IMG/VR virus record: IMGVR_UViG_3300042010_000106
Location: 1 to 64,000 of that record
Reading direction: 5' to 3' (one strand)
DNA length: 64,000 nucleotides
Positions 44,497 through 60,701 of the stretch are shown here, in pieces. Both the position numbers and the translations under genes were made by a program. Position 1 is the first letter of the stretch. Each line of letters begins with the position of its first letter. The notes under the pieces were generated by a model that ran no database searches, was not told where the DNA came from, and saw only the letters and a program-made list of their open reading frames with translations.

Positions 44497-44589
44497 TTGA
44501 CGCCTTATTGCGTTTCAGGCATAGTGGCTACCAGATCGGCAATTATGCCTGTTACCAAACTAACTCACGGTTCAAAGGAAGTTTCCCAA
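44497..44589 (+). promoter_or_regulatory. sigma70-type promoter + conserved leader, copy 1
   Basis: TTGACG-17-CATAGT-5-CCAGATCGGCAATTATGCC...AACTCACGGTTCAAAGGAAGTT. Confidence 0.85.
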
Positions 44590-44739
44590 ATGCGCGCATT
44601 CAATGCCCCAGCAACCCGTCGCACCGCAACTACAGCAGTAAAGAAATCTTGGCAGTGGAACAGCGACGAATTGCTGGCCGCTGAAAAACGCGCCAAGGAA
44701 GTTCAAGCGGCACAACGCCGTTTTCGTAAAGCAGCGTAA
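44590..44739 (+). CDS. 49-aa basic early protein
   Basis: AAGGA SD within leader. Confidence 0.65.
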   Translation: MRAFNAPATRRTATTAVKKSWQWNSDELLAAEKRAKEVQAAQRRFRKAA

Positions 44740-44751
44740 GGGTAATTTGAA

Positions 44752-44979
44752 ATGGCCCTTCACGCTTACACGATTATCGAACGCAAGAAGAACAGCAAAG
44801 GTGTTACCTATTCGTTGCAGCGTGACAGCGGCGAACTGGCAAACAAAGATTGTCCTTATGGTGTTTGGAAACTCTGCATCAACTATGTACGCGGCAAAAA
44901 CGTTGCGACATGGCGCTACATTGAAACCGGCCTCGATTTAGAAGCCGCACAAAAACTTTTCGCACGTCGAAGCAAATAA
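44752..44979 (+). CDS. hypothetical protein
   Basis: AAGGG SD. Confidence 0.7.
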   Translation: MALHAYTIIERKKNSKGVTYSLQRDSGELANKDCPYGVWKLCINYVRGKNVATWRYIETGLDLEAAQKLFARRSK

Positions 44980-44989
44980 GGAATACAAA

Positions 44990-45391
44990 GTGGATATCGT
45001 AATCGCAACTGGCAGCACCAAGAAAGTCAACGTTTGGAAACCGACCGCCGAAGAATGCACGCAGATTCGCGCCTTCGCCAAACGTGAAGTAAGCGGCATG
45101 AAACGGTTGGAAGGTGGTTCCCGCCACAACATGCACGACAGCAGCGTACCGACTTCGCTGAACATCGCGCTCGTTGCCAAGAAAGAAAATTGGGAGGATA
45201 CAGACCTTTCCGATTTCGTGCCGTGGGCAATCTTTCGTAAAGGCGTGGAATTGACCGAAGACGGTCGCGCCATCATCGACTTCTACGTGTACAACGCGTG
45301 GGGTTTGGAAACCAACATTTCCGTCTACTATAAAGGCGGCAAAATCGTTAAGCTGGCCCGCACTGGCCGTGGTCGTGAACTGACGTTTTAA
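44990..45391 (+). CDS. hypothetical protein
   Basis: AAGGA SD, GTG start. Confidence 0.7.
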   Translation: MDIVIATGSTKKVNVWKPTAEECTQIRAFAKREVSGMKRLEGGSRHNMHDSSVPTSLNIALVAKKENWEDTDLSDFVPWAIFRKGVELTEDGRAIIDFYVYNAWGLETNISVYYKGGKIVKLARTGRGRELTF

Positions 45392-45401
45392 CAGCACCAA
45401 A

Positions 45402-45436
45402 ACAAACCCCGCCTTGTGTGGGGTTTGTCAGTAGTG
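45402..45436 (+). repeat. intergenic hairpin+tail repeat A
   Basis: ACAAACCCCGC-CTTGT-GTGGGGTTTGTCAGTAGTG. Confidence 0.85.
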
Positions 45437-45464
45437 AAACTAAATAACCCTAAGAGGATTAATC

Positions 45465-45758
45465 ATGAAAGGCGCAATGGAAAAATGGTTGGACGAAATG
45501 TTCGGCCATTCAATCACGCAAGAAGAACGCGCATCCTACGAACATTGGTTGACTGCAACCGAGTCGATGTTAGGGCGTGACGTGGTGCGCGGTGGTGAGC
45601 TGGAAATGATTTTCCTAAAAGACTACATAGCCGGGAAAAATCCCGTGCAAGCTTCCGACGACTACAAAGCCGTTGAAGAGGAAAACAGAAAGCCACGCGC
45701 TTTGAAAATCATCAACCGCCACGGGGTTGAGTCTGACGTGATGTGGCCTTTCGACTGA
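45465..45758 (+). CDS. hypothetical protein
   Basis: GAGGA SD. Confidence 0.7.
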   Translation: MKGAMEKWLDEMFGHSITQEERASYEHWLTATESMLGRDVVRGGELEMIFLKDYIAGKNPVQASDDYKAVEEENRKPRALKIINRHGVESDVMWPFD

Positions 45759-45767
45759 CACACAAAC

Positions 45768-45799
45768 AACCCCGCCAAGTGCGGGGTTTGTCGGTAGTG
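45768..45799 (+). repeat. intergenic hairpin+tail repeat B
   Basis: AACCCCGC-CAAGT-GCGGGGTTTGTCGGTAGTG. Confidence 0.9.
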
Positions 45800-45830
45800 G
45801 AATAAACCACGCTCAATTAGGAAACGCACC

Positions 45831-46199
45831 ATGCAGAATCCAATGCTTTCGCAACTGCCACAAATCCACGCGATGTTTGCACCTAACCCGCATATCGCGC
45901 CATCGCAATTCGACATCGTGTTCGAATTGAAAACCCGGTAGGAAGCGGATCACGTGGCAATTGATATTTGCCAATTCGTTTTCACCCGCGCCACAATCGT
46001 GATTCCGCACGAAGGCAACGGCTGCATGTTCGTTACCGCAGGCAAGGATGATGTAGGCCCATGCGACCTTGCATCGCTGCGCAACATTCTTTGGCACGAC
46101 GACTATATAAAGTCGAAGCCAGAAAACATGGCGCTGCTTTTCACGCGGGCTAAGAAGCCGCAAAACAAATACCCGCGCCAACGCAGTGTGCGCCGCTGA
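45831..46199 (+). pseudogene. ORF interrupted by one in-frame TAG at 45939 (or two tandem in-frame ORFs 45831-45941 and 45954-46199)
   Basis: AGGA SD at 45831; same frame continues after TAG. Confidence 0.45.
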
Positions 46200-46213
46200 A
46201 CAGGAACCAAATC

Positions 46214-46609
46214 ATGGACAAGGAAATTGTAGACCTCGCAAAAAATCCCGAACACGTTAACGAATTGCACGATGGTGCGATTGTTTGCATAGGCGATGTG
46301 CATTTGCGTTTCTCTTTCGATTCGCTGAAGCCAGACGCCGCAACCAATCCCAAGGCGTTCGTTTTCATGACCACGTTGGATTCCGACATGGACGGGTATG
46401 AAAAAGATTGTGACCGGATTCGCGCCGAACACAAAGCGCAGTACCCGGACGTAGAAACCGAGCCGTACAGTGTTGAAACGATTTTGGGCTACGGTTGCAA
46501 TTACGGCGAGTTCATCAAGAATTTCCGCGCATCTGAAAATGGTGCAGCAATGATGACCCGTGAAGAAATGATCACAACGCTGAAGTCTGGCGTTTTCGTA
46601 ATCTGCTAA
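46214..46609 (+). CDS. hypothetical protein
   Basis: AGGA SD. Confidence 0.7.
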   Translation: MDKEIVDLAKNPEHVNELHDGAIVCIGDVHLRFSFDSLKPDAATNPKAFVFMTTLDSDMDGYEKDCDRIRAEHKAQYPDVETEPYSVETILGYGCNYGEFIKNFRASENGAAMMTREEMITTLKSGVFVIC

Positions 46610-46621
46610 AGGAGTAGGACA

Positions 46622-46906
46622 ATGAAAGTTAAAACCCCAGCTTTGAAAATGGGCAAATACGAATTGCGTGTTGACCCGACCACCGTTGACCCAACCCTGA
46701 CGCATTTTATCTTTGTGTGCGATTGCGGCTATTGGGGCAAGGGCGCCACGCTGTCAGAAGCGATTGCAGCCTCTGATAAAGAGCGCGGCTACACCACGCG
46801 TTCCAGCAATGTGCAAATCTGGATGTGTACGCCAGAATCGCGCATCAACGAAGAAGGCTCGCTCGTTTGCAAGATGGGCCAAAAACCAGCAGTAAGGATT
46901 AACTAA
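46622..46906 (+). CDS. hypothetical protein
   Basis: AAGGAG SD. Confidence 0.7.
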   Translation: MKVKTPALKMGKYELRVDPTTVDPTLTHFIFVCDCGYWGKGATLSEAIAASDKERGYTTRSSNVQIWMCTPESRINEEGSLVCKMGQKPAVRIN

Positions 46907-46923
46907 CGTCGAGGAATAAAACG

Positions 46924-47085
46924 ATGGCCGTTTATTTGATCGCTTGGATTATGTCGGTGGTGGCTTCGTGTGCAGCGAGTATCGGCATAGCAACAGGACA
47001 CCAAACAATCGGCGCCATCGTTTCGGCGTCCGCTGCTTTAATCGCACTCGGTTGCGGAATCTATGTTTTGAGGAAGGGAGAATAA
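46924..47085 (+). CDS. 53-aa two-TM membrane protein
   Basis: GAGGA SD; MAVYLIAWIMSVVASC...ALIALGCGIYVLRKGE; below track cutoff. Confidence 0.65.
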   Translation: MAVYLIAWIMSVVASCAASIGIATGHQTIGAIVSASAALIALGCGIYVLRKGE

Positions 47086-47087
47086 AA

Positions 47088-47240
47088 ATGCAGGAACCAT
47101 TGTGGTTGATCACGTACACCAGCGGCAACACGCAGGAAGAACACGGTAAGGACGAAGCCGACGTGCGAGAATTCATCGCCCGCAGCTACGCCCACGAAGG
47201 CGCTGTCAAATCCGTGGAACTTCACCCCGACTATCAGTGA
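47088..47240 (+). CDS. 50-aa hypothetical protein
   Basis: GGGAG SD. Confidence 0.65.
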   Translation: MQEPLWLITYTSGNTQEEHGKDEADVREFIARSYAHEGAVKSVELHPDYQ

Positions 47241-47248
47241 ATCAAAAT

Positions 47249-47278
47249 AACCCCGCCCTGTGCGGGGTTTGTCGGTAC
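47249..47278 (+). repeat. intergenic hairpin+tail repeat C
   Basis: AACCCCGC-CCTGT-GCGGGGTTTGTCGGTAC. Confidence 0.9.
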
Positions 47279-47311
47279 TAGCGCAATTTCGCGTACATAG
47301 GAGGCAACTTC

Positions 47312-47614
47312 GTGAACGACGCCAAACCACAAATCATTCACGGCAATTCAATTCCCGAAATACAATTCGAAAGCGGCACATTCATCAAACCCGGCTTTCG
47401 TGTACGTGTGAATTCTCGCCACGGCACGACAGGCACCGGTACAGTCAAAGATATTCGCGTGTGGCAGAATTGCCCGCCCACGATTGTTCTGGAAATGGAC
47501 GCTGACACAAATTGGTCGCAGCGTTCGCAAGCGGGTTGGCCGTTAGACGATGTACGCTTTCCAACCCTCGGCGTTTTCGGTGGCGAGATTGCCGACGTTC
47601 TGACTTTGAATTGA
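47312..47614 (+). CDS. hypothetical protein (SH3/KOW-like beta pattern)
   Basis: AGGAGG SD, GTG start. Confidence 0.7.
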   Translation: MNDAKPQIIHGNSIPEIQFESGTFIKPGFRVRVNSRHGTTGTGTVKDIRVWQNCPPTIVLEMDADTNWSQRSQAGWPLDDVRFPTLGVFGGEIADVLTLN

Positions 47615-47625
47615 GGAATGCAGTA

Positions 47626-47904
47626 ATGCGAAACAGATATCCAACCAATGCACAAAACGCAGTGTTCGCTGATCACGTCGGACAAAGCCTTTTGAAAGAA
47701 GGGCGAGACTGCGCAACATTCACCTACCTAGAGTTTTACGCACTGGTGCAGAAGTTTTGCCATTGCGAGAAATATGACGAATCAATGATGCGCCGTCATT
47801 TCCGTGAAAGCGTTCTCGGCGGTTCCGTGGAATTTGTAATCAGCTTCGGCACGAACATTGTGTTTGTCGCCAAGGATTCCAACTTCGCCCCGGTTGAAAT
47901 ATGA
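47626..47904 (+). CDS. hypothetical protein
   Basis: GAGGA SD. Confidence 0.7.
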   Translation: MRNRYPTNAQNAVFADHVGQSLLKEGRDCATFTYLEFYALVQKFCHCEKYDESMMRRHFRESVLGGSVEFVISFGTNIVFVAKDSNFAPVEI

Positions 47905-47913
47905 AAGCCACTT

Positions 47914-47944
47914 ACCCCGCCCTGTGCGGGGTTTGTCGGTAGTG
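47914..47944 (+). repeat. intergenic hairpin+tail repeat D
   Basis: ACCCCGC-CCTGT-GCGGGGTTTGTCGGTAGTG. Confidence 0.9.
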
Positions 47945-47975
47945 AACCAAGTTAATGACCGCAGGCGGAAATATC

Positions 47976-48695
47976 ATGGCTAAGAAGAAATTGGTTATAG
48001 GTGATTTCTACGATGGCAGTTCTGTCACCCTGAAGAAATACATCGACCTCGATTCAGAAATCGACAAAAGCAAAAACGTTGTCAACCTGAAGTTGGCGAA
48101 CAAGCCATGGGGCCGCATCGCGTTTATCACCAAGGGAAAGAAACCCGGTGTGTATGCGTACGTTTTGAAAGACGGCAAAGAAAAAGAATTGGCCCGTCGC
48201 TTTTTTAGTGCTGACGATCCATTGGGCTTGGAAGACGATTTCGACGAAGCGCAAATGGACATCGGCGAAATCATTGTTCACCTGTACACGCGTGGACGTT
48301 TGGAAGCCTACAAATTAATTCACTACTGCATCGGTGCAGACGCACGCGAATTCGGTGTGGTGCGTTGGGCTACCGGTTCAGGCGGCACAATTAGCAGCCC
48401 GCCTTTTCTCGACGACAAACGCTACCAATTAATTTTGGGCCGTCGTGGTGTGCCGGATTATTCTTTCGGCTTCGATACGTTGGACGAATTGAAAGCGTTC
48501 GTGTTCGATTGCCCTGACCATCTGGCATACGGCTACGTGACGATTTACAAAGTGGTCGATGGCGTTGCAGATATGCTTTGCAAACCGTCTGCAAAGAAAC
48601 ACGGGCAAGGTGACGATTTCACTTTGCTTGCCGAGTACACAAAGTTTGTCCGTATGGTCAGCGACGGCACGCGCATAGAATTGCCGCGCTACTAA
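47976..48695 (+). CDS. hypothetical protein
   Basis: long ORF, GGCGGA SD-like. Confidence 0.75.
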   Translation: MAKKKLVIGDFYDGSSVTLKKYIDLDSEIDKSKNVVNLKLANKPWGRIAFITKGKKPGVYAYVLKDGKEKELARRFFSADDPLGLEDDFDEAQMDIGEIIVHLYTRGRLEAYKLIHYCIGADAREFGVVRWATGSGGTISSPPFLDDKRYQLILGRRGVPDYSFGFDTLDELKAFVFDCPDHLAYGYVTIYKVVDGVADMLCKPSAKKHGQGDDFTLLAEYTKFVRMVSDGTRIELPRY

Positions 48696-48712
48696 TTTCG
48701 TCCGGTAGCTAT

Positions 48713-48868
48713 ATGAATCAACGATCCCCACTGTTCTACGTTTTCCGTCTAATCTTTCTGATCTTGGGTTTTTTCATCGTGCGGGCAATCTGGCGCCGCT
48801 ACACACAACCCAAGACAGAAACCAAACCATTACCAAAACAGGAACGCCCAAAATGGCCCAACACATGA
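48713..48868 (+). CDS. 51-aa single-TM protein
   Basis: MNQRSPLFYVFRLIFLILGFFIVRAIWRR...; fills gap. Confidence 0.5.
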   Translation: MNQRSPLFYVFRLIFLILGFFIVRAIWRRYTQPKTETKPLPKQERPKWPNT

Positions 48869-49215
48869 TTTTGACTTTGAGCAAATTGGTTATCGACGTT
48901 TTGCAGCACCGTTTGGAAGTGCTACAAGATCCCGGCCACGTTGCCGAGCTTTTCGAAGAACACGAAGAGCTTGATCAAGATTTGTTGGTGGAAGCTGCCG
49001 AGACGATGCTCGATGCTTTCAAACAAGGTTCTACAACGATCACGATTACCACTGACGAAGATTTGGAAATCCTGATCGACTGCATCGACGGTTGCACGTA
49101 TTTCGGCACGCCGACGAATTCAGCGAAAGAGCGCCAGCGCAAAAAGGCGTTTATCGAATTCGCCGAAAAGCTGAGCGAAGCAACCGGGCAACAAATCATC
49201 GCTGCCGTTCATTAA
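48853..49215 (+). CDS. hypothetical acidic protein
   Basis: AGGA SD. Confidence 0.7.
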   Translation: MAQHMILTLSKLVIDVLQHRLEVLQDPGHVAELFEEHEELDQDLLVEAAETMLDAFKQGSTTITITTDEDLEILIDCIDGCTYFGTPTNSAKERQRKKAFIEFAEKLSEATGQQIIAAVH

Positions 49216-49258
49216 TTCCAAACCTCCTTTCCAACCTTCGCTAAAAGAGATTTTCATC

Positions 49259-49609
49259 ATGGCTGCTAAATTGTCCGTTGTTGGTAAAACCGAACGTAAC
49301 CTCGACACCGTTTTCCCGTTTCTGGAATTCGAAGAAAAAGACGACACCGAGGAAGTCATGCTCGCGCTGAAGCAGGAATACAATTTCAGCGAGTACGACG
49401 GTGCGAACACCCTCACGCGGGGCGGTGAAGATTTCAATCTGGAACTGCGAACGGATCACAACGAGCTAGGGCACCGAGTTTTTAAAGCCGTGCTGGTAAC
49501 GTACTGCCCTTTGAACGAACACGGTTCGGAATACAACCTGTGCCCGCACGCAGCGCTGGCAGAACTTGCGGGCCTGCTTAAACCGGCCACACGGGCACGC
49601 CGCAAGTAA
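49259..49609 (+). CDS. hypothetical protein
   Basis: tiling ORF. Confidence 0.7.
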   Translation: MAAKLSVVGKTERNLDTVFPFLEFEEKDDTEEVMLALKQEYNFSEYDGANTLTRGGEDFNLELRTDHNELGHRVFKAVLVTYCPLNEHGSEYNLCPHAALAELAGLLKPATRARRK

Positions 49610-49631
49610 TCCACAGGCAACACAAACCATT

Positions 49632-49660
49632 AAGGGCGCTTCGGTGCCCTTTTTGTTTTT
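49632..49660 (+). terminator. intrinsic terminator (UUCG loop)
   Basis: AAGGGCGC-TTCG-GTGCCCTTTTTGTTTTT. Confidence 0.9.
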
Positions 49661-49670
49661 ATAAAACCGC

Positions 49671-49761
49671 TTGACGTAATGAACCCGGTTCTGTAGTTTT
49701 GGTTCCAGATCGGCAATTATGCCTGTAGAACTTAGAACTCACGGATAAAGGTAAGTTAACC
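49671..49761 (+). promoter_or_regulatory. sigma70-type promoter + conserved leader, copy 2
   Basis: TTGACG-17-TAGTTT-5-CCAGATCGGCAATTATGCC...AACTCACGGATAAAGGTAAGTT. Confidence 0.85.
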
Positions 49762-49995
49762 ATGAACACAGACGGTGCAAAGATTTACCCGACTCGCGCA
49801 AAACAAGTGACGACGTTAATCGGTTGCCCGCATTTGGAATTGGTGCAGGGCGTTGGTTACTGGTATTTCGTATACGATGACCAGCGCGGCAAATATGAAA
49901 CGCATTCTGTTCAAGTCCTGCGTCTGAATCATCTGTCGATGGTTGAGTGGATTGCAGAAGGCAAAGAATTCGTCTCCACATTTGAGGGCAAGTGA
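49762..49995 (+). CDS. hypothetical early protein
   Basis: first gene after leader 2. Confidence 0.7.
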   Translation: MNTDGAKIYPTRAKQVTTLIGCPHLELVQGVGYWYFVYDDQRGKYETHSVQVLRLNHLSMVEWIAEGKEFVSTFEGK

Positions 49996-49996
49996 A

Positions 49997-50269
49997 ATGG
50001 AATATGTTCTATACATTGTAGGAGGCGCAATTGCCTCTTACATGATTGGCGGCGCTTTTCTGCTTACCTGCGTAATCCTTTACGTCAAAGGAACGCCAAA
50101 CAATCCAGAACACGCCCGCCTGCTTATGATGTACAGCGAATGCTTACCGAAAGGAAAAGCCTACATCTGGCTTGTGGCAATCTGGTACACGGTTTTCTGC
50201 TGGGCGCCTATCGCGTTCGGCTGGATGAAAACGCCGACTGAACTTCTCAACTGGAAGAAAGAAAAATGA
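49997..50269 (+). CDS. two-TM membrane protein
   Basis: GAGG SD; hydrophobic segments. Confidence 0.7.
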   Translation: MEYVLYIVGGAIASYMIGGAFLLTCVILYVKGTPNNPEHARLLMMYSECLPKGKAYIWLVAIWYTVFCWAPIAFGWMKTPTELLNWKKEK

Positions 50270-50538
50270 AACTGGCCCTACTCGCAATCCTGTTCGTTCC
50301 CTTTCTGGCGTCCGCTGCAACTTCTGCCCCGGCACAACCTGAACCGGCTAAAGTGGTTTCGGAACTGATCGTGGGTGAACAGGCGGTGCTGACCTACTTC
50401 AACGAAACCACGGAACAGGTTTGTACCTACGCGGCTTCGATAAACAGTACCGCGCCGTCGCTTACCTGCGTTTCGATCTATACGCTTTCTGACGATGCCC
50501 AACAAAACGTTAGGGATCGCGCCGCAGCCTTTAGATAA
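50266..50538 (+). CDS. secreted protein with signal peptide
   Basis: MKLALLAILFVPFLASA-A. Confidence 0.7.
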   Translation: MKLALLAILFVPFLASAATSAPAQPEPAKVVSELIVGEQAVLTYFNETTEQVCTYAASINSTAPSLTCVSIYTLSDDAQQNVRDRAAAFR

Positions 50539-50581
50539 ACCTTTTTAGCCGTTCGCCCATAAGGGAGCGGCTAATGGGGTT
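50538..50581 (+). other. long hairpin (GTTC..GAGC family, RNase III-like variant)
   Basis: AACCTTTTTAGCCGTTC...GAGCGGCTAATGGGGTT. Confidence 0.5.
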
Positions 50582-50610
50582 GGCCTAAAAAGTTTTTTTT
50601 GGTAAACCGG

Positions 50611-50701
50611 TTGACACTAACGCGCCTCTAAGGCAACATTGATTCCAGATCGGCAATTACGCCCATCAACATTTGAACTCACGGATCTAAGGAAGTTAAT
50701 C
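50611..50701 (+). promoter_or_regulatory. sigma70-type promoter + conserved leader, copy 3
   Basis: TTGACA-17-CAACAT-5-CCAGATCGGCAATTACGCC...AACTCACGGATCTAAGGAAGTT. Confidence 0.85.
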
Positions 50702-52096
50702 ATGACTACTCGCACTAACGCTCTGCTGAACGCCGCTATCACCGCTCTGGTTGCTCAAGTTGCCATCGCGAAAAAAGCCGGTATCGAAACTTTGGGCCTC
50801 GGCTCCGAAATTCTGCCGGGTGTGAAATTCCGCGACCTGAAAAACTGGCTGAAGGAAAACGGTGCATCGGCTCACGTCGAAACCAAACCAGTTGCAAAAG
50901 TGGCTGCAAGCGCAAAAGCCGTTTCGACTGCAAAAGCTGTCGGCAAGGCAATCGACAAAGTTGTGGCGAAAGATGCCGCGCCTGAATTCACCACTTCGGA
51001 ACTGAAAGGTTCTGACCTGCTGATCGGCCGCGTCAAAGACAAAATCGCCAGCGTCGTTAAATCGCCTGAAGGCGTGCGAGTAGCCGTGACCGAAAACGGT
51101 CTGCGTATCCCGGTTGTAATGCTGGAGCGCAACAACCGTGGCAACCTGCGCACTGTTGCCGAATTCGATCCAAAAGCACCGGCTACCAAAACCGCTGCCA
51201 AGGCCACTGCAAAAGCTGAAGTGAAAGCACCGGCTGCAAAAGCTGCCCATAAAGCAGAAGGCCGTGAACTGGTTTCGCGTATCAGCTCCAATCTGGTCAG
51301 CGCGATTTACAACCGCGACGAAAAAACCCTGACCGTGACTTTCAAGTCGGGCGCTGTATGGCAGTACGAAAACGTTGGTATCCGTGAAGCTAACGCGATG
51401 GCTAAAGAAGAATCGCACGGCAAATATTTCACCGCCAACATCAAAAACGTGAAAGAAGGCAAATGCCTCGTTCGCGGTGACAAAGCCCCGGCCAAAACCG
51501 TTGCTGAAGCTCCTGTGAAAGCGCCTGCTGCAAAAGCCGCTGCTGTTAAAGTGGTTGCCGGTGCCAAGCCTGTAGACGAAGCCAACGAACTGAAGGCTAC
51601 CGAAGTTCGCGGTCACACTGTTTTGAACGGTCGCACTAAAGAAGTCGTAGAGCGTGTGGTTCGCAACAAAGAAACCCAACGTCGCGAAGTCGTTTGCGAA
51701 TCCGGCGCACGTTTCCCGCTGGCAATGATTGCAAACGTGAAAGGCAAACTGCGCGTTATCGAAGTTGCTGAAACCGTTGCACCTGTAACCGCAAAAGGTG
51801 GCGCTGTGAAAAAGGCCACTGCTGCAAAAGCTGAAGTTGCACCGAAAGCAGAATCGACTAACCGTCGCGCCGCTTTCAGCGTTCCAAAAATCAGCGAAGT
51901 GCGCGGCGCAACTTTCACCGTGAACAAAGGCAGCAAGTCGAAAGAAGTAACCGCCAAGAAAATCGTTACCCGCGACGAAGTGCGCAAGGTAATCACTGAA
52001 AACGGCGGCGAGCTGAACTTCGACGACCTGTCGATTTCCGAAGGCGTGCTGCACTTCACCGGTAAGCTGATGGCTTCCGACTTCCACGCGCTGTAA
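50702..52096 (+). CDS. KTSC-domain, Ala/Lys-rich repeat protein (putative nucleic-acid-binding)
   Basis: SSNLVSAIYN....TLTVTFKSGAVWQYENV......M....S.GKYF..NIKN = KTSC; AK-rich linkers; strong codon bias. Confidence 0.85.
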   Translation: MTTRTNALLNAAITALVAQVAIAKKAGIETLGLGSEILPGVKFRDLKNWLKENGASAHVETKPVAKVAASAKAVSTAKAVGKAIDKVVAKDAAPEFTTSELKGSDLLIGRVKDKIASVVKSPEGVRVAVTENGLRIPVVMLERNNRGNLRTVAEFDPKAPATKTAAKATAKAEVKAPAAKAAHKAEGRELVSRISSNLVSAIYNRDEKTLTVTFKSGAVWQYENVGIREANAMAKEESHGKYFTANIKNVKEGKCLVRGDKAPAKTVAEAPVKAPAAKAAAVKVVAGAKPVDEANELKATEVRGHTVLNGRTKEVVERVVRNKETQRREVVCESGARFPLAMIANVKGKLRVIEVAETVAPVTAKGGAVKKATAAKAEVAPKAESTNRRAAFSVPKISEVRGATFTVNKGSKSKEVTAKKIVTRDEVRKVITENGGELNFDDLSISEGVLHFTGKLMASDFHAL

Positions 52097-52118
52097 CAGC
52101 AGAACGCGGAAAATTAAA

Positions 52119-53144: not shown

Positions 53145-53177
53145 ACTGTAAAGGTACAGTGAAAACTTACCGAGGAT

Positions 53178-53459
53178 ATGAACGTGGATATTTTAGACCC
53201 GCAAGTTGGTGACACTCACGTTGTAGGTGACGTTACGTTTCGCGTGAAATCCGTTGTACAGGATTCCGTCGAATACGAAATCATCGAGGGTAAAGCAGAC
53301 AGCGCTAAACTGGAATCGCTGTTTCAAATCATGGCCCAAGAATGGTTCAACGCGTTGCCACCTCTGAATCAATTCCTGATGCAGAATCCCAACGGCGGAA
53401 AATTCAACGTCAAAGCAAACACAAACGTTAAGGGTGATTCAAATGCCATGGAATCCTGA
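53178..53459 (+). CDS. hypothetical protein
   Basis: GAGGA SD. Confidence 0.7.
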   Translation: MNVDILDPQVGDTHVVGDVTFRVKSVVQDSVEYEIIEGKADSAKLESLFQIMAQEWFNALPPLNQFLMQNPNGGKFNVKANTNVKGDSNAMES

Positions 53460-53961: not shown

Positions 53962-53963
53962 TC

Positions 53964-54380: not shown

Positions 54381-54385
54381 CCCAC

Positions 54386-54423
54386 AAGGCTCCTTTCCAT
54401 TTGGTTAGGGGCCTTTTTCGTTT
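54386..54423 (+). terminator. intrinsic terminator
   Basis: AAGGCTCCT...AGGGGCCTTTTTCGTTT. Confidence 0.75.
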
Positions 54424-54465
54424 CTCAAGGGTAGAGACACTAAAACCACTTAAAGGAATAACACC

Positions 54466-54924
54466 ATGGGCCTCGCCTCTTCGATTTCCAGTTTGTACTT
54501 TGTCACCTGCACACTCGGCGGCGTTTGCAACGAACAACGCAGCGTAGACTTTATCGAACTGGCACAAAACAAACCGGTACAGTCCTGCGAAACATTTTCG
54601 AAGGCGCGCCCGGTCACAGAAGAATTTGCCCTGTTCGCAAAAGCTGAAGGATACAAAGTCAGCCTGCGTTGCGATTCGAATACAGAAGGCAAAGTCAAAG
54701 CTACTGACGCGACAGCAGTTGCGTACATGACTTCCTGCGGGCCGAAAGATTGCACCACGGATAAACTGGCGATGTTCAACGACGGGAATACCGACGTTAC
54801 AAAAACCTTGGACGACTGCGACAGCGCCGCCGAACTTCTGGCTAAGCCGTTCGTGGTAAAACGGAAAGCACAGGGCTACACCAAGTTTTCCTATAGCTGC
54901 TTCCCAACGGCGGAAACCCAATAA
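54466..54924 (+). CDS. Cys-rich protein, possibly exported
   Basis: AAGGA SD; two similar C..C halves; flanked by terminators. Confidence 0.7.
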   Translation: MGLASSISSLYFVTCTLGGVCNEQRSVDFIELAQNKPVQSCETFSKARPVTEEFALFAKAEGYKVSLRCDSNTEGKVKATDATAVAYMTSCGPKDCTTDKLAMFNDGNTDVTKTLDDCDSAAELLAKPFVVKRKAQGYTKFSYSCFPTAETQ

Positions 54925-54960
54925 GGCGCCTGAACGCCTGTAACCGTTTCAAAACCACGT

Positions 54961-54996
54961 AAGGCCCTTTGCCCTAATAGGCACGGGGCCTTTTTT
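54961..54996 (+). terminator. intrinsic terminator
   Basis: AAGGCCCT..TGCC..GGCA..GGGGCCTTTTTT. Confidence 0.85.
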
Positions 54997-55049
54997 CGTT
55001 TGGGCCTATAGCGTTCTATAAGGGGCCTAGCCCCGTTTGGTTTTGGTTG

Positions 55050-55140
55050 TTGACTCTAAACGGTTCCTTTGAGATAGTGGCAACCAGATCGGCGATTTCG
55101 CCATTAAGATTACCCACTCACGGATCAAGGGAAGTTTAGA
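55050..55140 (+). promoter_or_regulatory. sigma70-type promoter + conserved leader, copy 4
   Basis: TTGACT-17-GATAGT-5-CCAGATCGGCGATTTCGCC...CACTCACGGATCAAGGGAAGTT. Confidence 0.85.
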
Positions 55141-55365
55141 ATGAAGCGCTTCGGCACCTTTAACGTCAGCCTGCAAATCATCAACGACAAAACCGGCGCT
55201 GCCGTTTCGAAAACCATGCAAGACACTTTTGCATACGAAGACATGACCGACGCCAAGGAATACTTTTCCAGCGACCGTTATCTGGAACGCGTACTGTCTA
55301 CAAAGATTCCTGTTCAACTTCGTCGTCACGTACGTTTGCAAACCAGCAACGTCGCCCACGTTTAA
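55141..55365 (+). CDS. hypothetical early protein
   Basis: first gene after leader 4. Confidence 0.7.
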   Translation: MKRFGTFNVSLQIINDKTGAAVSKTMQDTFAYEDMTDAKEYFSSDRYLERVLSTKIPVQLRRHVRLQTSNVAHV

Positions 55366-55396
55366 ATCGACCTCACTCAATTCAAGGAAACTGTAA

Positions 55397-55537
55397 ATGA
55401 ACATCACCACCATGACCGGTCACATTGCTGAACTCGCTGTACTCGCTGCATTCCTGTTTTGCTTGGGCGTGCCGACCTACATCGAAATGCGCAAGAAAGC
55501 CCGCGCACCGAAACCAACTGGCGCCACCAAAATCTGA
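55397..55537 (+). CDS. 46-aa single-TM protein
   Basis: AAGGA SD; ELAVLAAFLFCLGVPTY then basic tail. Confidence 0.6.
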   Translation: MNITTMTGHIAELAVLAAFLFCLGVPTYIEMRKKARAPKPTGATKI

Positions 55538-58029: not shown

Positions 58030-58077
58030 CGCACAGGCCCTTCGGGGCCATTGTGCTTTCCAGCGTAGGAGGTTTTT

Positions 58078-58422
58078 ATGACCATCGTTGTAATGATCCA
58101 CAATCGTACACGCGCCACCACAAAATTTCTTGGCATGGTCGAAGGCTATCTGTGCGACGTTGATACGTTGACCGACGCCCATATCTATCCAGCACTTTAT
58201 AAAGCGCATGAGGAAGTGCGCGAATTCCTGAATCGCCCGAATGTTCAAATGGGTGAACGCACAGTGCTTGACCCGGTTATCAGTAACGTCAGCAATTTGA
58301 TTCCCGGCGCATACAACGAAGTCGATTTTGAGTTTTGCGAATTGAGCCTGAAACACACCGGGACAATTATTGCAGCCATCGACGAATCCGAATCCGTTCC
58401 AAGATCCCAAATTATTAGTTGA
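58078..58422 (+). CDS. hypothetical protein
   Basis: AGGAGG SD. Confidence 0.75.
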   Translation: MTIVVMIHNRTRATTKFLGMVEGYLCDVDTLTDAHIYPALYKAHEEVREFLNRPNVQMGERTVLDPVISNVSNLIPGAYNEVDFEFCELSLKHTGTIIAAIDESESVPRSQIIS

Positions 58423-58433
58423 GGTATTCCACC

Positions 58434-58913
58434 ATGATGTTTGCAATCCACGTGACAGGCATTCCAATGTTGGCACTCGGCGCCGTTTCGGGCGCGTGCT
58501 TAAACGGACTCATGACTTCGGTGTGTTCCGAAGCTGGTTACGAAGTGGGAGGCGGCAATCACATTTTGCAGAACGGCGGCAAAGTTGAATTGACTGCTGA
58601 AGACTGCATTCGTGTTGTCGAGGTTTGGCAGGATTTGCAAATCGACGAATCCGATGCGATGGAAATTTTCGCGTCCTTGAAACATTGTGGGTTGTCCGGC
58701 GCCGATTGGGAATTCCACGTGTTCCCTGAAAAACAGGAGCTGGAAGAAATCAAAGAAGCGCGCACCATGGCTGTTCATTACTCCGACGATCTAGACGATC
58801 AAATGGACACTCTCAATAAACAAATGGAAGCACTGCATAACAAACAGCGTGCGGCATTGCGTAGTTGCGCACGTCTCGATCAAATGGTTCGCGATAGGAG
58901 TCCGTCGAAATGA
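58434..58913 (+). CDS. hypothetical protein, C-terminal coiled coil
   Basis: GAGGT SD. Confidence 0.7.
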   Translation: MMFAIHVTGIPMLALGAVSGACLNGLMTSVCSEAGYEVGGGNHILQNGGKVELTAEDCIRVVEVWQDLQIDESDAMEIFASLKHCGLSGADWEFHVFPEKQELEEIKEARTMAVHYSDDLDDQMDTLNKQMEALHNKQRAALRSCARLDQMVRDRSPSK

Positions 58914-59395
58914 ATGGTATCAATATGCGTTTTGGTATCAGCATGGACGGCGGGCCAATGATTCACGTAGGCAACGCCGGGAACCTTCAAAGCGGAATGA
59001 TTGAACTGGCCGCGAAGATTTTGAAGCGCGACCTGCACGCGGCTTTCACCATTGGTGGCGTGTGGAAGTTTGAACCAGAACAAGCACACAAGTTTTTCGA
59101 CAAAGCCAAAAACATGAGCATGGGGAATAAAGATTCTGCCATGTTCTGGTCGTCGATGATTCACGCAAGCACGCACAACACGTGGTGCCGTATTTCGTTC
59201 TTCGATCCACGTTACGAAATCGGCTACCTGCAAGATGCGTTGGAACAAAGCCAGCGTGACGCAGCGAACGCCAACGATACAGAGCGCCATTTGAAAGAGG
59301 CGGCGTTCATTGCGCAAAAGGAACGTGAAGCTGCACAGCGCCACATTGACCGCCTGCGTACTGCACTGGAGGCAAAACGAAATGAATCTGTTTGA
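58910..59395 (+). CDS. hypothetical protein, C-terminal coiled coil
   Basis: AGGAG SD. Confidence 0.7.
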   Translation: MNGINMRFGISMDGGPMIHVGNAGNLQSGMIELAAKILKRDLHAAFTIGGVWKFEPEQAHKFFDKAKNMSMGNKDSAMFWSSMIHASTHNTWCRISFFDPRYEIGYLQDALEQSQRDAANANDTERHLKEAAFIAQKEREAAQRHIDRLRTALEAKRNESV

Positions 59396-59603
59396 GAAAA
59401 TGGATTACGCGCCGACGCTAAAGCAAAAGCTGCAAGGCGAAACCAATCTGGAGTTCATGCCGTATCACGTGCGCGTACCGGGCCGACAAAGTTTTCGGCA
59501 TACGTCGTACATGTCTACGGCGGAACACGTGAAAGCGAACAAGGCGAAAGCCAAACGCAAATCCGAAAAGAAAGCGCGTAAGCAATCTCGCTCACGCAAA
59601 TAA
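59382..59603 (+). CDS. small protein with basic C-terminal tail
   Basis: GGAGG SD. Confidence 0.7.
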   Translation: MNLFEKMDYAPTLKQKLQGETNLEFMPYHVRVPGRQSFRHTSYMSTAEHVKANKAKAKRKSEKKARKQSRSRK

Positions 59604-59614
59604 GGAGAAACACC

Positions 59615-60337
59615 ATGTACCAATTAGATTCTACGGCCTACTGGTTTTTGATCGCCTGCGCCGCCGTGCTGTTCTACAAAATCATTATCCCGGCAAGCTG
59701 GAAATTCGGCGTGGTGTTTATCCGCACCGTGTTCATGTTTCTGGAAGCCAAGGAAAACGATTTCCCGCTGTGGCCTGTTTTGCGTGCGCTGCCTAAAACG
59801 TTGTGGCGTGTGTGGCGAGCAGATTTGAACACCTGCTACGATTACACGGATGTATGCCGTTTCAATTACCGCACCGGCAAGTTCGAAAGCATGCTGACCA
59901 TGGATCACGAATGGTTGAACACGCTCGCGCTTTTGATTCGGCGCGGCCAAAAGAAATTCACGCTGACATTCCCGGCTGCAATTACTTCGTGGCTGGTGAA
60001 CAAAGACGAACGCGTCACGTTGAATTTCAATATCCGCTCAATGCGCTTTCTCGACGCCACCGCAAACGTGCTGATGATTTCGGAAACCAAGCACGCAGGC
60101 ATTGACGGTTTGATTGGGCATTCGCTGCAACAATTAATTCGCGTGCTGGAGCATTACGCACCGGATGTTTTTGCAGTCGTGGTAGAAACGCCGTTGGGTG
60201 TGGTTTCTCACATTTCAACTTTGGAAGCCGAAGAGGTTTTCATCAAAGGCAAGGCGCACCAGTTGTTCGTAATCAACACGGTGACTGTCGCGCCAAAGAA
60301 AACACACCTTGAATTGGTACGCGGCCATGGTCACTAA
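59615..60337 (+). CDS. membrane-anchored hypothetical protein
   Basis: AAGGAG SD; N-terminal TM. Confidence 0.75.
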   Translation: MYQLDSTAYWFLIACAAVLFYKIIIPASWKFGVVFIRTVFMFLEAKENDFPLWPVLRALPKTLWRVWRADLNTCYDYTDVCRFNYRTGKFESMLTMDHEWLNTLALLIRRGQKKFTLTFPAAITSWLVNKDERVTLNFNIRSMRFLDATANVLMISETKHAGIDGLIGHSLQQLIRVLEHYAPDVFAVVVETPLGVVSHISTLEAEEVFIKGKAHQLFVINTVTVAPKKTHLELVRGHGH

Positions 60338-60614
60338 ATATTTGGTACGGAATGCAATCAACCAACGGCCAACCGCAAAGCACGAACACTTTGTTAGCGA
60401 CACGCTTATGACCGCCGCGTTAAACGATTTGAAACGTGACGGTTACGAACGCGTATACGCTCTTATGGTTCGTGTACGGGATATGCCACCGGGCGCCGCT
60501 ATTGTGTTCGACCTGAGCGAGCGTAAGTGTCTACGGATCGCCCACGGGTGCAGCTACGACACACAGCGCCTAATAGGGCCGCTGCTGGGCTACGGGACTA
60601 TCTCAAGGGCTTGA
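60327..60614 (+). CDS. hypothetical protein
   Basis: overlapping tiling ORF. Confidence 0.6.
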   Translation: MVTKYLVRNAINQRPTAKHEHFVSDTLMTAALNDLKRDGYERVYALMVRVRDMPPGAAIVFDLSERKCLRIAHGCSYDTQRLIGPLLGYGTISRA

Positions 60615-60701
60615 CAGGGTTTGTGGGCGCAGTACAATGAAATCCAACACGGACACACTGTGCCCGCGATTCCTACCATCACGTACAAAGGTAAGTTTCC
60701 C
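60611..60701 (+). promoter_or_regulatory. sigma70-type promoter + divergent leader, copy 5
   Basis: TTGACA-16-TACAAT-5-CCA, 5' hairpin, TCACGTACAAAGGTAAGTTTCCCATG. Confidence 0.8.

What the first reader, a model, noticed from the sequence alone, without database searches (positions are those of the whole stretch)
44497..60701. Repeated sigma70 promoter + fixed-length ~55-nt structured leader: candidate undescribed cis-regulatory RNA shared by the early operons
Seen: four cassettes at 44497, 49671, 50611 and 55050 share the geometry TTGACN-17-NANNNT-5nt-CC|AGATCGGC. The predicted +1 A (44533, 49707, 50647, 55086) lies 57, 55, 55 and 55 nt before the ATG of four unrelated genes. Each leader has AGATC, then a hairpin GGCA-ATTA-TGCC that becomes GGCG-ATTT-CGCC in copy 4 (A-U to G-C compensatory change), then a variable A/C-rich linker, then ACTCACGG-N3-4-AAGG(N)AAGTT over the RBS. 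The -35/-10 spacers and linkers diverge while these blocks stay fixed, so this looks selected rather than a recent duplication. Each cassette follows a terminator or long hairpin. Copy 5 (60611) keeps the CC|A spacing, a 56-nt length, a 5' hairpin and the 3' block. A 3'-block-only copy sits near 41941-41968. Inference: options are (a) an RsmA/CsrA-type site (CACGGA in 3 of 4 copies, next to the SD), (b) a put/nut-like antitermination RNA for reading through the many downstream hairpins, or (c) an operator or translational switch for a phage regulator. AACU/AGUU pairing could also occlude the SD.
Basis: partly seen in the sequence, partly recalled or inferred. Interest (0 to 1): 0.85.

Follow-up and report, generated by a model that had tools for sequence, protein, structure and literature searches.

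The report
Repeated early promoter-leader cassettes, jumbo phage
Six copies of a ~95-bp module (a host-type promoter, a small hairpin at the start of the transcript, and a shared block over the ribosome-binding site) head the small-gene operons of a giant Lu11-like Pseudomonas phage and recur in about a dozen related phage genomes; it resembles the promoter-terminator 'PeSL' cassettes of T4-type phages, but its conserved leader has no described function.

Summary
The window is part of a 312-kb Lu11/HRDY3-like jumbo myovirus (IMG/VR contig). A covariance model finds exactly six cassettes, all on the + strand between 41.9 and 60.7 kb. Four are near-identical in their blocks, and 41881 and 60611 are diverged full copies. 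About 50 distinct copies occur in roughly a dozen related genomes, including Lu11 and HRDY3. None was found in 69 kb of PaBG, in bacterial genomes, or in Rfam.

The family architecture is: upstream terminator (four of six window copies), TTGAC-17-(TGn)TAnnnT, a CA start, a GC-rich hairpin of variable sequence and loop, an A/C-rich linker, then (C)ACTCAC-N8-GGAAGTT(T) placed 4-7 nt before the ATG.

The hairpin is supported by folding statistics (cluster-mean z -2.0, flanks +0.3). It is not supported by consensus covariation.

CACGGA (the RsmA idea) occurs in 3 of 52 relatives, and AACU/AGUU pairing is not conserved. There is no nut/put anatomy.

Best reading: a PeSL-like portable early-expression cassette. 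Its leader combines a 5' hairpin with a shared translation-initiation block. The invariant flanks of that block go beyond what a Shine-Dalgarno site needs, which suggests an unidentified binding partner. Function is inferred, not shown.

The parts
41881..41971 (+). Cassette 0 (diverged). -35 TTGACA 41881-41886; 18-nt spacer; -10 TATCTT 41905-41910; hairpin GCTG-CCGCA-CAGC 41915-41927; block ACTCACACATCTAGGGAAGTT 41943-41963; ATG 41969 (115-aa ORF). The promoter lies inside the end of the upstream ORF, and there is no upstream terminator.
   Evidence: (R1 35.6 bits, E 1e-9)
44408..44444 (+). Terminator-like hairpin (11+3 bp) preceding cassette 1. The U-tract is weak.
   Evidence: -34.5 kcal/mol, z -3.85
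44497..44592 (+). Cassette 1. -35 TTGACG 44497-44502; -10 CATAGT 44520-44525; predicted +1 A 44533; hairpin GGCA-ATTA-TGCC 44538-44549; block ACTCACGGTTCAAAGGAAGTT 44563-44583; ATG 44590 (49-aa ORF, homologous to the first gene after HRDY3 cassette L024 18218).
   Evidence: (45.9 bits)
49632..49651 (+). Intrinsic-terminator-like hairpin followed by TTTTTGTTTTT, immediately upstream of cassette 2.
49671..49764 (+). Cassette 2. -35 TTGACG 49671-49676; -10 TAGTTT 49694-49699; predicted +1 49707; hairpin GGCA-ATTA-TGCC 49712-49723; block ACTCACGGATAAAGGTAAGTT 49737-49757 (GGT, not GGA); ATG 49762 (77 aa, phrog_23727).
   Evidence: (43.3 bits)
50538..50581 (+). Long hairpin followed by AAAAAGTTTTTTTT, upstream of cassette 3.
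   Evidence: -28.9 kcal/mol, z -3.19
50611..50704 (+). Cassette 3. -35 TTGACA 50611-50616; -10 CAACAT 50634-50639; predicted +1 50647; hairpin GGC(A)-ATTA-(C)GCC 50652-50663 with an A.C mismatch; block ACTCACGGATCTAAGGAAGTT 50677-50697; ATG 50702 (464-aa basic A/K-rich protein with a KTSC domain). An orthologous cassette plus gene is present in HRDY3 and several relatives.
   Evidence: (55.1 bits)
54961..55034 (+). Two terminator-like hairpins upstream of cassette 4: 54961-54992 followed by TTTTTT, and 55022-55034 followed by GTTTGGTTTT.
55050..55143 (+). Cassette 4. -35 TTGACT 55050-55055; TG-extended -10 GATAGT 55073-55078; predicted +1 55086; hairpin GGCG-ATTT-CGCC 55091-55102; block ACTCACGGATCAAGGGAAGTT 55116-55136; ATG 55141 (74 aa).
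   Evidence: (47.5 bits)
60611..60704 (+). Cassette 5 (diverged). -35 TTGACA 60611-60616; 16-nt spacer; -10 TACAAT 60633-60638; hairpin CGGACAC-ACT-GTGCCCG 60648-60668; degenerate block ATCACGTACAAAGGTAAGTT 60678-60697; ATG 60702 (212 aa).
   Evidence: 11/12 promoter match; 19.7 bits, E 2e-4

Best explanation
The finding is a family of portable early-gene expression cassettes of Lu11-like jumbo phages. They are the functional counterpart of the PeSL (promoter-early stem-loop) cassettes of T4-type phages.

Parts of each unit:
- usually an upstream terminator hairpin that insulates it from the preceding operon;
- a host sigma70 promoter: -35 TTGAC, 17-nt spacer, often a TG-extended but otherwise weak -10, and a G+C-rich discriminator;
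- a start at the A of a CA dinucleotide about 7 nt after the -10.

The resulting ~55-nt leader has three parts:
1. A GC-rich hairpin 2-6 nt from the 5' end. Its presence is conserved; its sequence and loop are not. It most likely protects the 5' end from decay and keeps the rest of the leader from mispairing.
2. An unstructured A/C-rich linker.
3. A ~24-nt block, (C)ACUCAC-RNWWUWAR-GGAAGUU(U). Its GGAAG serves as the Shine-Dalgarno sequence, 6-8 nt from the AUG. Its invariant flanks (UCAC upstream, GUU downstream) mark these first-gene mRNAs for a common, still unidentified recognition step at translation initiation.

Because the cassettes are repeated and bound small modules of ORFan genes, they also act as points where modules are exchanged.

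Shown here: the anatomy, the copy number, the family-wide conservation, the bias toward a hairpin, the SD spacing, and the module rearrangement.

Inferred: the transcription start, early timing, the stabilising role of the hairpin, and any binding partner of the block.
For: Identity of the phage: capsid, sheath and other structural hits. The closest relatives are Lu11, HRDY3 and PaBG. The window is identical to IMGVR_UViG_3300042010_000106.

Copies:
- Six cassettes in the window, all on the + strand, all at 41.9-60.7 kb, with none in the structural half.
- HRDY3 has six in the syntenic region, each directly upstream of an annotated CDS.
- A block-only pattern scan of IMG/VR returned jumbo-phage hits that all carry TTGAC about 61 nt upstream, although the pattern did not ask for it.
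- About 50 distinct cassettes occur in roughly a dozen genomes.

Promoter: family logo with TG at -15/-14 and TAnnnT after a 17-nt spacer.

Geometry: the TTGAC-to-ACTCAC gap is 57-62 nt in 50 of 52 copies, and AAGT-to-ATG is 5-7 nt in 43 of 52.

Hairpin:
- In a set ascertained without reference to the hairpin, mean dG is -8.7 and mean z is -1.87.
- Over 29 sequence clusters, z is -2.02 (t = -9.2, p = 6e-10), against +0.33 and +0.35 for same-length promoter and coding flanks.
- Stem sequences differ between paralog groups: GGCA/UGCC, GGCG/CGCC, GGCC/GGCC, CGGGC/GCCCG, CGGAC/GUCCG, and a re-invented GAGAUU/AAUCUC stem in L049.
- Loop length varies from 3 to 8 nt, which argues against a dimeric DNA operator.

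The block tracks the ATG, not the promoter. In long-leader copies (L048, Lu11 L097) it stays 4-6 nt from the ATG.

The block is not just a strong SD. Its predicted anti-SD pairing (-5.6 kcal/mol) is average for the phage (-5.9 for 106 other HRDY3 genes), while the flanks are nearly invariant.

The block persists where it is not used as the SD: in HRDY3 24028, L033 5550 and L081 it pairs with a downstream arm and the gene has its own SD.

Upstream terminators.

Module shuffling: the three genes of one HRDY3 operon lie behind three different cassettes in the window.

PeSLs are defined as stem-loop + sigma70 promoter + SD + start codon in hyperplastic regions (PMC4122927, PMC2839356).

Group 2 jumbo phages, which include Lu11 and PaBG, lack an RNA polymerase of their own and use host RNAP with phage sigma factors (PMC7824862; PMC7412058).
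Against: - No transcription start, timing or RNA data exist for any family member. '+1' and 'early' are predictions.
- Consensus-structure covariation is not significant: 66.7% of cells are paired versus 64.8% when shuffled, and the covariation score is reached by 92 of 500 shuffles. RNAalifold on the own-lineage copies finds only invariant pairs and zero compensatory changes.
- Sense and antisense strands fold equally well (-8.76 vs -8.46 kcal/mol, p = 0.63). An RNA hairpin therefore cannot be told apart from a DNA inverted repeat by energy. G.U-type cells outnumber A.C-type cells only 32 to 16.
- The hairpins in this very window are only 3-4 bp.
- The mean unpaired probability of the initiation block is a modest 0.57.
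- Most family members were collected with patterns that require ACTCAC and GGAAGTT, which inflates apparent invariance. Copies found by the model alone show AGTCAC, GATCAC, CTAAC and GGAACG variants.
- The shuffling evidence comes from one genome pair.
Confidence: 0.55

Rival explanations
1. The UCAC-N8-GGAAGUU block is an operator for a phage-encoded post-transcriptional regulator. This would be a translational repressor or site-specific endoribonuclease that co-ordinately shuts off (or licenses) the first gene of every early operon, as RegA and RegB do in T4. The copies without an ORF would act as attenuators or decoys. This overlaps with the best explanation and differs in claiming a dedicated trans-acting factor.
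For: - The flanks are nearly invariant across genomes whose capsid proteins are ~70% identical, although SD strength is only average.
- The block is found only together with the promoter and hairpin, never at internal genes of the sequence examined.
- The block is retained in three genomes where it is not the SD but forms the 5' arm of a terminator-like hairpin ahead of a separate SD.
- RegA orthologues are reported for group 2.1 jumbo phages but are not mentioned for group 2.2 (PMC7824862), which leaves room for an analogue.
- The one cassette-driven gene conserved across the family encodes a basic protein with a KTSC domain, which that paper regards as RNA-binding.
Against: - No factor has been identified.
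- The KTSC link is guilt by association. The A/K-rich protein could equally be a DNA-binding nucleoid protein.
- Conservation could reflect an interaction with the host ribosome.
- Ascertainment bias inflates the apparent invariance.
Confidence: 0.25
2. The leader is a target of the host RsmA/RsmE (CsrA) system, which would bind GGA motifs at CACGGA and at the SD.
For: - CACGGA is present in 4 of 6 copies of this genome.
- The SD region ANGGAAGU resembles the published (A/U)CANGGANG(U/A) consensus. That consensus is recalled from the literature, not tested here.
Against: - CACGGA occurs in only 3 of 52 copies in relatives.
- Copies 2 and 5 have GGU instead of GGA at the SD.
- Any good SD resembles the CsrA consensus.
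- The GGA is not presented in a conserved short hairpin loop. The only candidate closing stem, ACU/AGU, is invariant and breaks without compensation in Lu11 variants.
Confidence: 0.06
3. The leader is a nut/put-like RNA that makes RNA polymerase resistant to downstream terminators.
For: - It is a promoter-proximal hairpin in every unit, and there are many hairpins in the region.
- A terminator-like hairpin lies directly after the block in three relatives.
Against: - There is a single hairpin with non-conserved loop sequence and length.
- No boxA-like element is visible in the aligned leaders.
- The conserved block is anchored to the start codon.
- The units are short and each has its own promoter after a terminator.
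- No Rfam family matches.
Confidence: 0.04
4. The conserved elements act on DNA. The inverted repeat just after the start site, the block, or both would be binding sites for a phage repressor or roadblock that turns the early promoters off.
For: - Sense and antisense strands fold equally well, so a DNA palindrome is not excluded.
- The stem core GGC/GCC is nearly invariant.
- The early regions of relatives encode several DNA-binding proteins: a transcriptional regulator, LytTR, and a TraR/DksA zinc finger.
- The discriminators are G+C-rich (0.68), as in promoters sensitive to DksA/TraR-type factors. That property is established knowledge, not tested here.
Against: - The spacing between the repeat arms varies from 3 to 8 nt and arm length from 3 to 9 bp, which is poor for a dimeric operator.
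- The block keeps its distance to the ATG, not to the promoter.
- G.U-type pairs outnumber A.C-type pairs 2:1 on the sense strand.
Confidence: 0.08
5. The leader has no function beyond promoter and SD. The shared blocks would be leftovers of cassette duplication, homogenised by gene conversion.
For: - The cassettes are repeated and bound shuffled modules.
- The four strong copies of this genome share a lineage-specific CCAGATCGGC.
Against: - Spacer and linker are at about random identity (0.32-0.33) while the blocks are at 1.00.
- The same block and a hairpin at the same place persist across roughly a dozen diverged genomes and more than ten paralog groups.
Confidence: 0.07

Closest known systems
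PeSL (promoter-early stem-loop) cassettes of T4-type phages (Arbiol et al. 2010, PMC2839356; Comeau et al. 2014, PMC4122927)
   Same: Both are composite repeated units made of a terminator stem-loop, then a sigma70-like -35/N17/-10 promoter, then the SD and start codon of the next gene. Both are clustered in regions of small ORFan genes and are associated with module exchange between related phages. The host phages rely on host RNAP plus phage sigma factors.
   Different: There is no sequence relation. The phage clade is different (Lu11-like jumbo phages, group 2.2). The present cassettes have a ~55-nt leader with a second, transcript-internal hairpin and a ~24-nt invariant block around the SD, which PeSL descriptions do not include. 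Mini-circles and recombination activity were not tested here.
5'-terminal stabiliser stem-loops of bacterial and phage mRNAs (the ompA 5' UTR type)
   Same: A stable hairpin lies a few nucleotides from the predicted 5' end, followed by an unstructured region and the ribosome-binding site. Sequence is free while structure is kept.
   Different: The transcription start and any effect on half-life are unknown. The hairpins in this window are only 3-4 bp. The predicted 5' overhang is 2-6 nt.
T4 RegA translational operator and RegB cleavage sites on early mRNAs
   Same: A shared short sequence sits at the translation-initiation regions of many unrelated early genes, allowing co-ordinate post-transcriptional control.
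   Different: No RegA or RegB homologue was identified. The motif has a different sequence and lies upstream of the AUG rather than over it. No binding or cleavage has been shown.
CsrA/RsmA binding sites
   Same: A GGA-containing sequence overlaps the SD.
   Different: There is no conserved hairpin presentation. Two window copies lack GGA at the SD.
Lambda nut and HK022 put antitermination RNAs
   Same: A promoter-proximal structured RNA shared by early operons.
   Different: There is one variable hairpin, no boxA, the block is anchored to the AUG, and the operons are short and self-contained.

Membership tests
PeSL-type composite promoter-terminator cassette | Sigma70-like promoter with -35, ~17-nt spacer and -10 | tested here: met
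   TTGAC in all copies; 17-nt spacer (16 or 18 in the two diverged copies); TAnnnT with a frequent TG extension.
PeSL-type composite promoter-terminator cassette | Stem-loop or terminator immediately upstream of the promoter | tested here: met
   Present before copies 1-4 (z -1.0 to -3.9; U-tracts at copies 2, 3 and 4). Absent before copies 0 and 5.
PeSL-type composite promoter-terminator cassette | SD and start codon of the downstream gene at the 3' end of the unit | tested here: met
   GGAAG lies 6-8 nt from the ATG in nearly all copies.
PeSL-type composite promoter-terminator cassette | Multiple copies clustered among small non-conserved genes, with gene-content differences at the cassettes between related phages | tested here: met
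   Six copies in 19 kb of mostly unannotatable ORFs. One HRDY3 operon is distributed behind three window cassettes. Only one genome pair was compared.
PeSL-type composite promoter-terminator cassette | Occurrence in T4-type (Tevenvirinae-like) phages and recombination or mini-circle formation between copies | not testable with these tools
   The host phage is a Lu11-like jumbo phage (group 2.2 of PMC7824862), not a T4-type phage in the narrow sense. Recombination needs experiments. I file this as 'works like', not as a member by descent.
CsrA/RsmA target site | Conserved A(N)GGA motifs, at least one besides the SD, presented in short hairpin loops | tested here: not met
   CACGGA in 3 of 52 relatives; no supported closing stem. 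Copies 2 and 5 have GGU at the SD.
Lambda nut / HK022 put antitermination RNA | boxA plus a boxB hairpin with a conserved loop (nut), or two conserved stem-loops of ~65-70 nt (put) | tested here: not met
   no Rfam hit.
5'-terminal mRNA stabiliser hairpin | Hairpin within a few nt of the mapped 5' end that prolongs half-life | not testable with these tools
   A hairpin is present at the predicted +3 to +7. No data exist on the transcription start or on half-life.
Single-subunit (T7/T3-like) RNAP promoter, which the CTCAC...GGGA string resembles | A phage-encoded single-subunit RNAP and fixed CTCAC-N4-GGGAGA spacing | tested here: not met
   The spacing is N8, not N4. Group 2 jumbo phages lack any phage RNAP according to PMC7824862 and PMC7412058. 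The genome outside the window was not scanned here.
Any Rfam family | Score at or above the gathering threshold | tested here: not met
   whole window, 0 hits; 41.8-61 kb at E <= 5, with only a chance anti-hemB hit elsewhere.

The most novel reading that the evidence does not exclude
The leader is a true cis-regulatory RNA of Lu11-like jumbo phages. The UCAC-N8-GGAAGUU block would be the operator of a dedicated phage-encoded RNA-binding regulator, a functional analogue of T4 RegA/RegB in a clade that lacks them. One candidate is the conserved cassette-driven KTSC-domain protein. This regulator would co-ordinately switch the first genes of all early operons. In the ORF-less versions, where the block forms the 5' arm of an intrinsic terminator, the same interaction would work as a protein- or ribosome-dependent transcription attenuator or as a decoy RNA.
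Probability: 0.25. Interest if true: 0.7.

Novelty: new variant of a known kind. Interest (0 to 1): 0.5.

Why it matters
Nothing is known about how Lu11/HRDY3-type jumbo phages organise early expression. They have no RNA polymerase of their own and must capture host RNAP and ribosomes at once.

- A ~95-bp module conserved in about 50 copies gives an immediate handle: a defined early-promoter consensus, predicted start sites, and a leader whose invariant positions can be mutated.
- If the block binds a factor, it would reveal a regulon-wide post-transcriptional switch in a phage group without RegA.
- If it does not, the cassette is still a compact, apparently insulated expression unit for Pseudomonas.
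- It also extends the PeSL idea (regulatory cassettes as joints for gene-module shuffling) beyond T4-type phages.

Tried and rejected
1. Near-identity search of the region against GenBank phages: no match. Relatives were found only through the capsid protein.
2. Rfam at gathering and at permissive thresholds: nothing at the cassettes.
3. The exact 5'-block pattern in IMG/VR returned only the source contig plus chance hits in coding sequence.
4. Host mimicry. The block pattern in one genome per bacterial species gave 100 listed single hits in unrelated taxa. One was on a Pseudomonas megaplasmid, and none had both TTGAC upstream and an ATG downstream.
It added only two new relatives.
6. PaBG: no cassette in 69 kb syntenic to the window's region.
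7. A single consensus structure for the hairpin: not supported by covariation. Per-sequence folding statistics were used instead.
8. Strand of the structure from energies: undecided.
9. 'Exceptionally strong SD' as the reason for block conservation: rejected, because pairing energy is average.
10. T7-like promoter, or a second promoter inside the block: rejected on spacing and on the absence of a phage RNAP in this group.
11. A TraR/DksA-like protein, as in HRDY3, was sought in the window and not found.
12. A tRNA or known RNA downstream of the ORF-less Lu11 cassette: none.
13. Literature on Lu11, PaBG and HRDY3: no description of the motif.

Full report
**What the window is.** The large ORFs match a jumbo-myovirus major head protein, tail sheath and related PHROGs. 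The head protein is 73%, 71.5% and 67% identical to those of Pseudomonas phages Lu11, HRDY3 and PaBG. There is no nucleotide-level match in GenBank phages. Loci returned by an IMG/VR pattern scan are identical to the window, which places it on IMGVR_UViG_3300042010_000106, 312,325 bp. All plausible genes run on the + strand. After about 41 kb the window consists of small ORFs that mostly have no family assignment.

**Checking the observation.**
- CCAGATCGGC occurs exactly four times, only there.
- A profile of the four copies re-finds them at E about 1e-26.
- Mean pairwise identity is 1.00 in CCAGATCGGC and ACTCACGG, but 0.32 in the promoter spacer and 0.33 in the linker.
- All four follow strong hairpins, and three of these have U-tracts.

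- Copy 3's hairpin carries an A.C mismatch (GGCA...CGCC).
- The copy near 41941 is a complete but diverged cassette with its own promoter (TTGACA-18-TATCTT) and its own small hairpin.
- Copy 5 has a 16-nt spacer and a degenerate block.

A covariance model built from the family and run over the whole window without filters gives exactly six hits. All are on the + strand and all lie between 41.9 and 60.7 kb. A seventh copy of the same genome lies outside the window on the other strand of the contig. It has a longer two-hairpin leader and precedes a GNAT acetyltransferase gene.

**The family.** HRDY3's syntenic region (L024) holds six homologous cassettes, each ending at an annotated start codon or just before one.

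- A scan of IMG/VR with the 3' block alone returned many ~310-kb contigs. In every jumbo-phage hit, TTGAC stood about 61 nt upstream although the pattern did not require it.
- A second scan added Lu11 itself and further genomes.
- Model R1 then found 68 matches (58 distinct) in the loci held.
- The syntenic 69 kb of PaBG has none.
- A scan of one genome per bacterial species gave only scattered chance hits with no cassette architecture.
- Rfam has nothing, and the literature searched does not mention the motif.

**Anatomy from the family.**

*Promoter.* TTGAC, a 17-nt spacer, T/G at -15/-14 in most copies, then TAnnnT, then a G+C-rich discriminator with mean GC 0.68. This is a sigma70 extended -10 design. 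It fits published statements that this phage group has sigma factors but no RNA polymerase of its own (PMC7412058; PMC7824862). The likely start is the A of a CA about 7 nt after the -10. This is a prediction only.

*Hairpin.* Next comes a GC-rich hairpin whose sequence, stem length (3-9 bp) and loop (3-8 nt) differ between paralog groups.

*Linker and block.* An A/C-rich linker of about 10-14 nt follows, then the block (C)ACTCAC-RNWWTWAR-GGAAGTT(T), then 4-7 nt and the ATG.
- The TTGAC-to-block distance is 57-62 nt in 50 of 52 copies.
- In the two long-leader copies the block stays next to the ATG, not next to the promoter.

**Is the hairpin real?** With one fixed consensus structure, no. On the model-based alignment, 66.7% of cells pair against 64.8% after shuffling, and the covariation score is matched by 92 of 500 shuffles. 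RNAalifold on the closest copies finds only invariant pairs.

The reason is that the hairpin shifts in register and size between groups. Per-sequence folding is clear:
- In the set collected without any reference to the hairpin, the 5' part of the leader has mean dG -8.7 kcal/mol and mean z -1.87 against dinucleotide shuffles.
- Over 29 sequence clusters the mean z is -2.02 (t = -9.2, p = 6e-10; 27 of 29 negative).
- Same-length segments from the promoter and the coding region give +0.33 and +0.35.

Individual cases show pairing kept through change:
- CGGGC/GCCCG versus CGGAC/GUCCG.
- GGCA/UGCC versus GGCG/CGCC versus GGCC/GGCC.
- One copy (L049) lost the usual 5' arm and pairs a new arm with the linker.

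Whether the structure acts in RNA or DNA cannot be settled by energy, since sense and antisense fold equally well. G.U-type pairs outnumber A.C-type pairs 32 to 16, and the variable arm spacing is a poor fit for a dimeric operator. Both points lean toward RNA.

**What the block is.**
- GGAAG sits 6-8 nt from the AUG, the normal SD position. AGGAA-type SDs are the commonest in this phage.
- The predicted anti-SD pairing of cassette genes (-5.6 kcal/mol) is no better than that of 106 other HRDY3 genes (-5.9). SD strength therefore does not explain the near-invariance of UCAC upstream and GUU downstream.
- In the sequence examined, the block occurs only together with the promoter and hairpin.
- In one orthologous locus the block is kept although it is not the SD. 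In HRDY3 and in 3300012277_000001, AAGGGAAGU pairs with ACUUCCCUU, is followed by a U-run, and is scored as terminator-like. In 3300045988_165726 a shorter GGGAA/UUCCC pairing is present without a U-run. In all three the gene's own SD and ATG follow about 25 nt later. In 3300046522_000316 the same gene has the canonical arrangement.

These points suggest the block is recognised by something besides the anti-SD. I could not identify what.

- CACGGA is largely a peculiarity of this genome: 4 of 6 copies here, 3 of 52 elsewhere. Two window copies have GGU at the SD. The RsmA idea is therefore weak.
- AACU/AGUU is not conserved. The invariant ACU/AGU pairing breaks without compensation in Lu11 variants.
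- A nut/put role lacks the defining parts and does not fit short, individually promoted and terminated units.
- An operator or translational switch remains possible and is my main rival.
- I also considered a T7/T3-like promoter, because of CTCAC...GGGA. I rejected it on spacing and on the absence of a phage RNAP in this group.

**Comparison with known systems.** The closest described thing is the PeSL of T4-type phages: a stem-loop, a sigma70-like early promoter, then the SD and start codon, repeated in hyperplastic regions and mediating module exchange (PMC2839356, PMC4122927).

The present cassettes share all of these features. This includes a sign of shuffling: genes A, B and C of one HRDY3 operon lie behind cassettes 1, 2 and 4 of the window, and the first gene of another HRDY3 cassette is the second gene of the cassette-1 operon.

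They differ in phage clade and in sequence. They also have a ~55-nt leader with an internal hairpin and a 24-nt conserved block. I therefore call this a new variant of a known kind that works like a PeSL, not a member by descent.

**Verdict.** The finding is real, non-random and conserved across a phage clade. The promoter interpretation is well supported. The 'structured leader' is supported as a position-specific hairpin, but not by formal covariation. Interest is moderate: it is a well-defined, testable regulatory module in an unstudied jumbo-phage group, with about a one-in-four chance of hiding a new post-transcriptional switch.

Noticed in passing
L024 24028-24140 (HRDY3 282,027-282,139); L033 5518-5640; L081 142-265: ORF-less or attenuator versions of the cassette. 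The block's AAGGGAAGU pairs with a downstream ACUUCCCUU plus a U-run, which is scored as terminator-like. The gene's own SD and ATG follow about 25 nt later. The orthologue in 3300046522_000316 (L076) has the canonical block-ATG arrangement.
   Followed up: partly
L090 6505-6760 (Lu11): A cassette on the opposite strand to the other Lu11 copies. It is followed by about 200 nt of strongly folding sequence, with no ORF of 40 aa or more starting nearby. No tRNA and no Rfam match. It may be a cassette-driven non-coding RNA.
   Followed up: partly
window 44590-55537 versus L024 5897-18818: Three consecutive genes of one HRDY3 operon (after cassette 18218) are homologous to the gene after window cassette 1, the gene after cassette 2, and the second gene after cassette 4. 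The gene directly after HRDY3 cassette 5805 is the second gene of the cassette-1 operon (79% identity). Modules have been reshuffled at the cassettes.
   Followed up: partly
L107 around 12713 and 20508; L108 around 40068 (PaBG): PaBG lacks the cassette but has its own small set of repeated upstream regions: GCAGTTATGAGATAATG (a TG-extended -10), a hairpin, then ATAGATGAGGTTA before the ATG. This suggests the same design with a different sequence.
   Followed up: no
window 50702-52096: The gene behind cassette 3 encodes a 464-aa, very basic, Ala/Lys-rich protein with a central KTSC domain (Pfam 2.8e-13; PDB 7x8c 1e-4). It is the cassette-driven gene most widely conserved in the family. A published survey treats KTSC as an RNA-binding domain.
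   Followed up: partly
window 40350-40946: A 198-aa protein with a full-length match to the VgrG3-like C-terminal peptidoglycan-hydrolase domain (Pfam 4.9e-57). It is probably the endolysin or a cell-wall-degrading protein and lies just upstream of the cassette region.
   Followed up: no
L024 21081-21284 (HRDY3): A 67-aa TraR/DksA-type zinc-finger protein lies inside the cassette region of HRDY3 (Pfam 2.5e-10). The cassette promoters have G+C-rich discriminators (0.68), the class of promoter such factors inhibit. No homologue was found in the window.
   Followed up: partly
L048 1788-1894 (same genome, outside the window): A seventh cassette on the other strand of the contig. Its leader is about 75 nt with two hairpins, the block is canonical, and the first gene is a GNAT acetyltransferase.
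   Followed up: partly
L089 4424-4540 (rc coordinates; 3300047469_000103): A cassette whose block is followed by a second, degenerate block-like repeat (TCTCAC-N8-AAGGA) that carries the actual ATG. This looks like a tandem partial duplication of the block.
   Followed up: no
window 44534-44537, 49708-49711, 50648-50651, 55087-55090: A GATC (Dam-type site) lies at predicted +2 to +5 in the four strong copies and their closest relatives, but in only 2 of 52 copies elsewhere. This is a lineage-specific feature of unknown meaning.
   Followed up: no
window 52112-52197 (- strand): A weak Rfam hit to anti-hemB (21.9 bits, E 0.3, far below gathering). It overlaps a hairpin at 52119-52141 just after the KTSC gene and is most likely a chance match to a terminator.
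   Followed up: no
window 62638-63411: An ORF with an acyl-carrier-protein-like region (phrog_5934, 2.6e-16), matching the ACP genes annotated in HRDY3.
   Followed up: no
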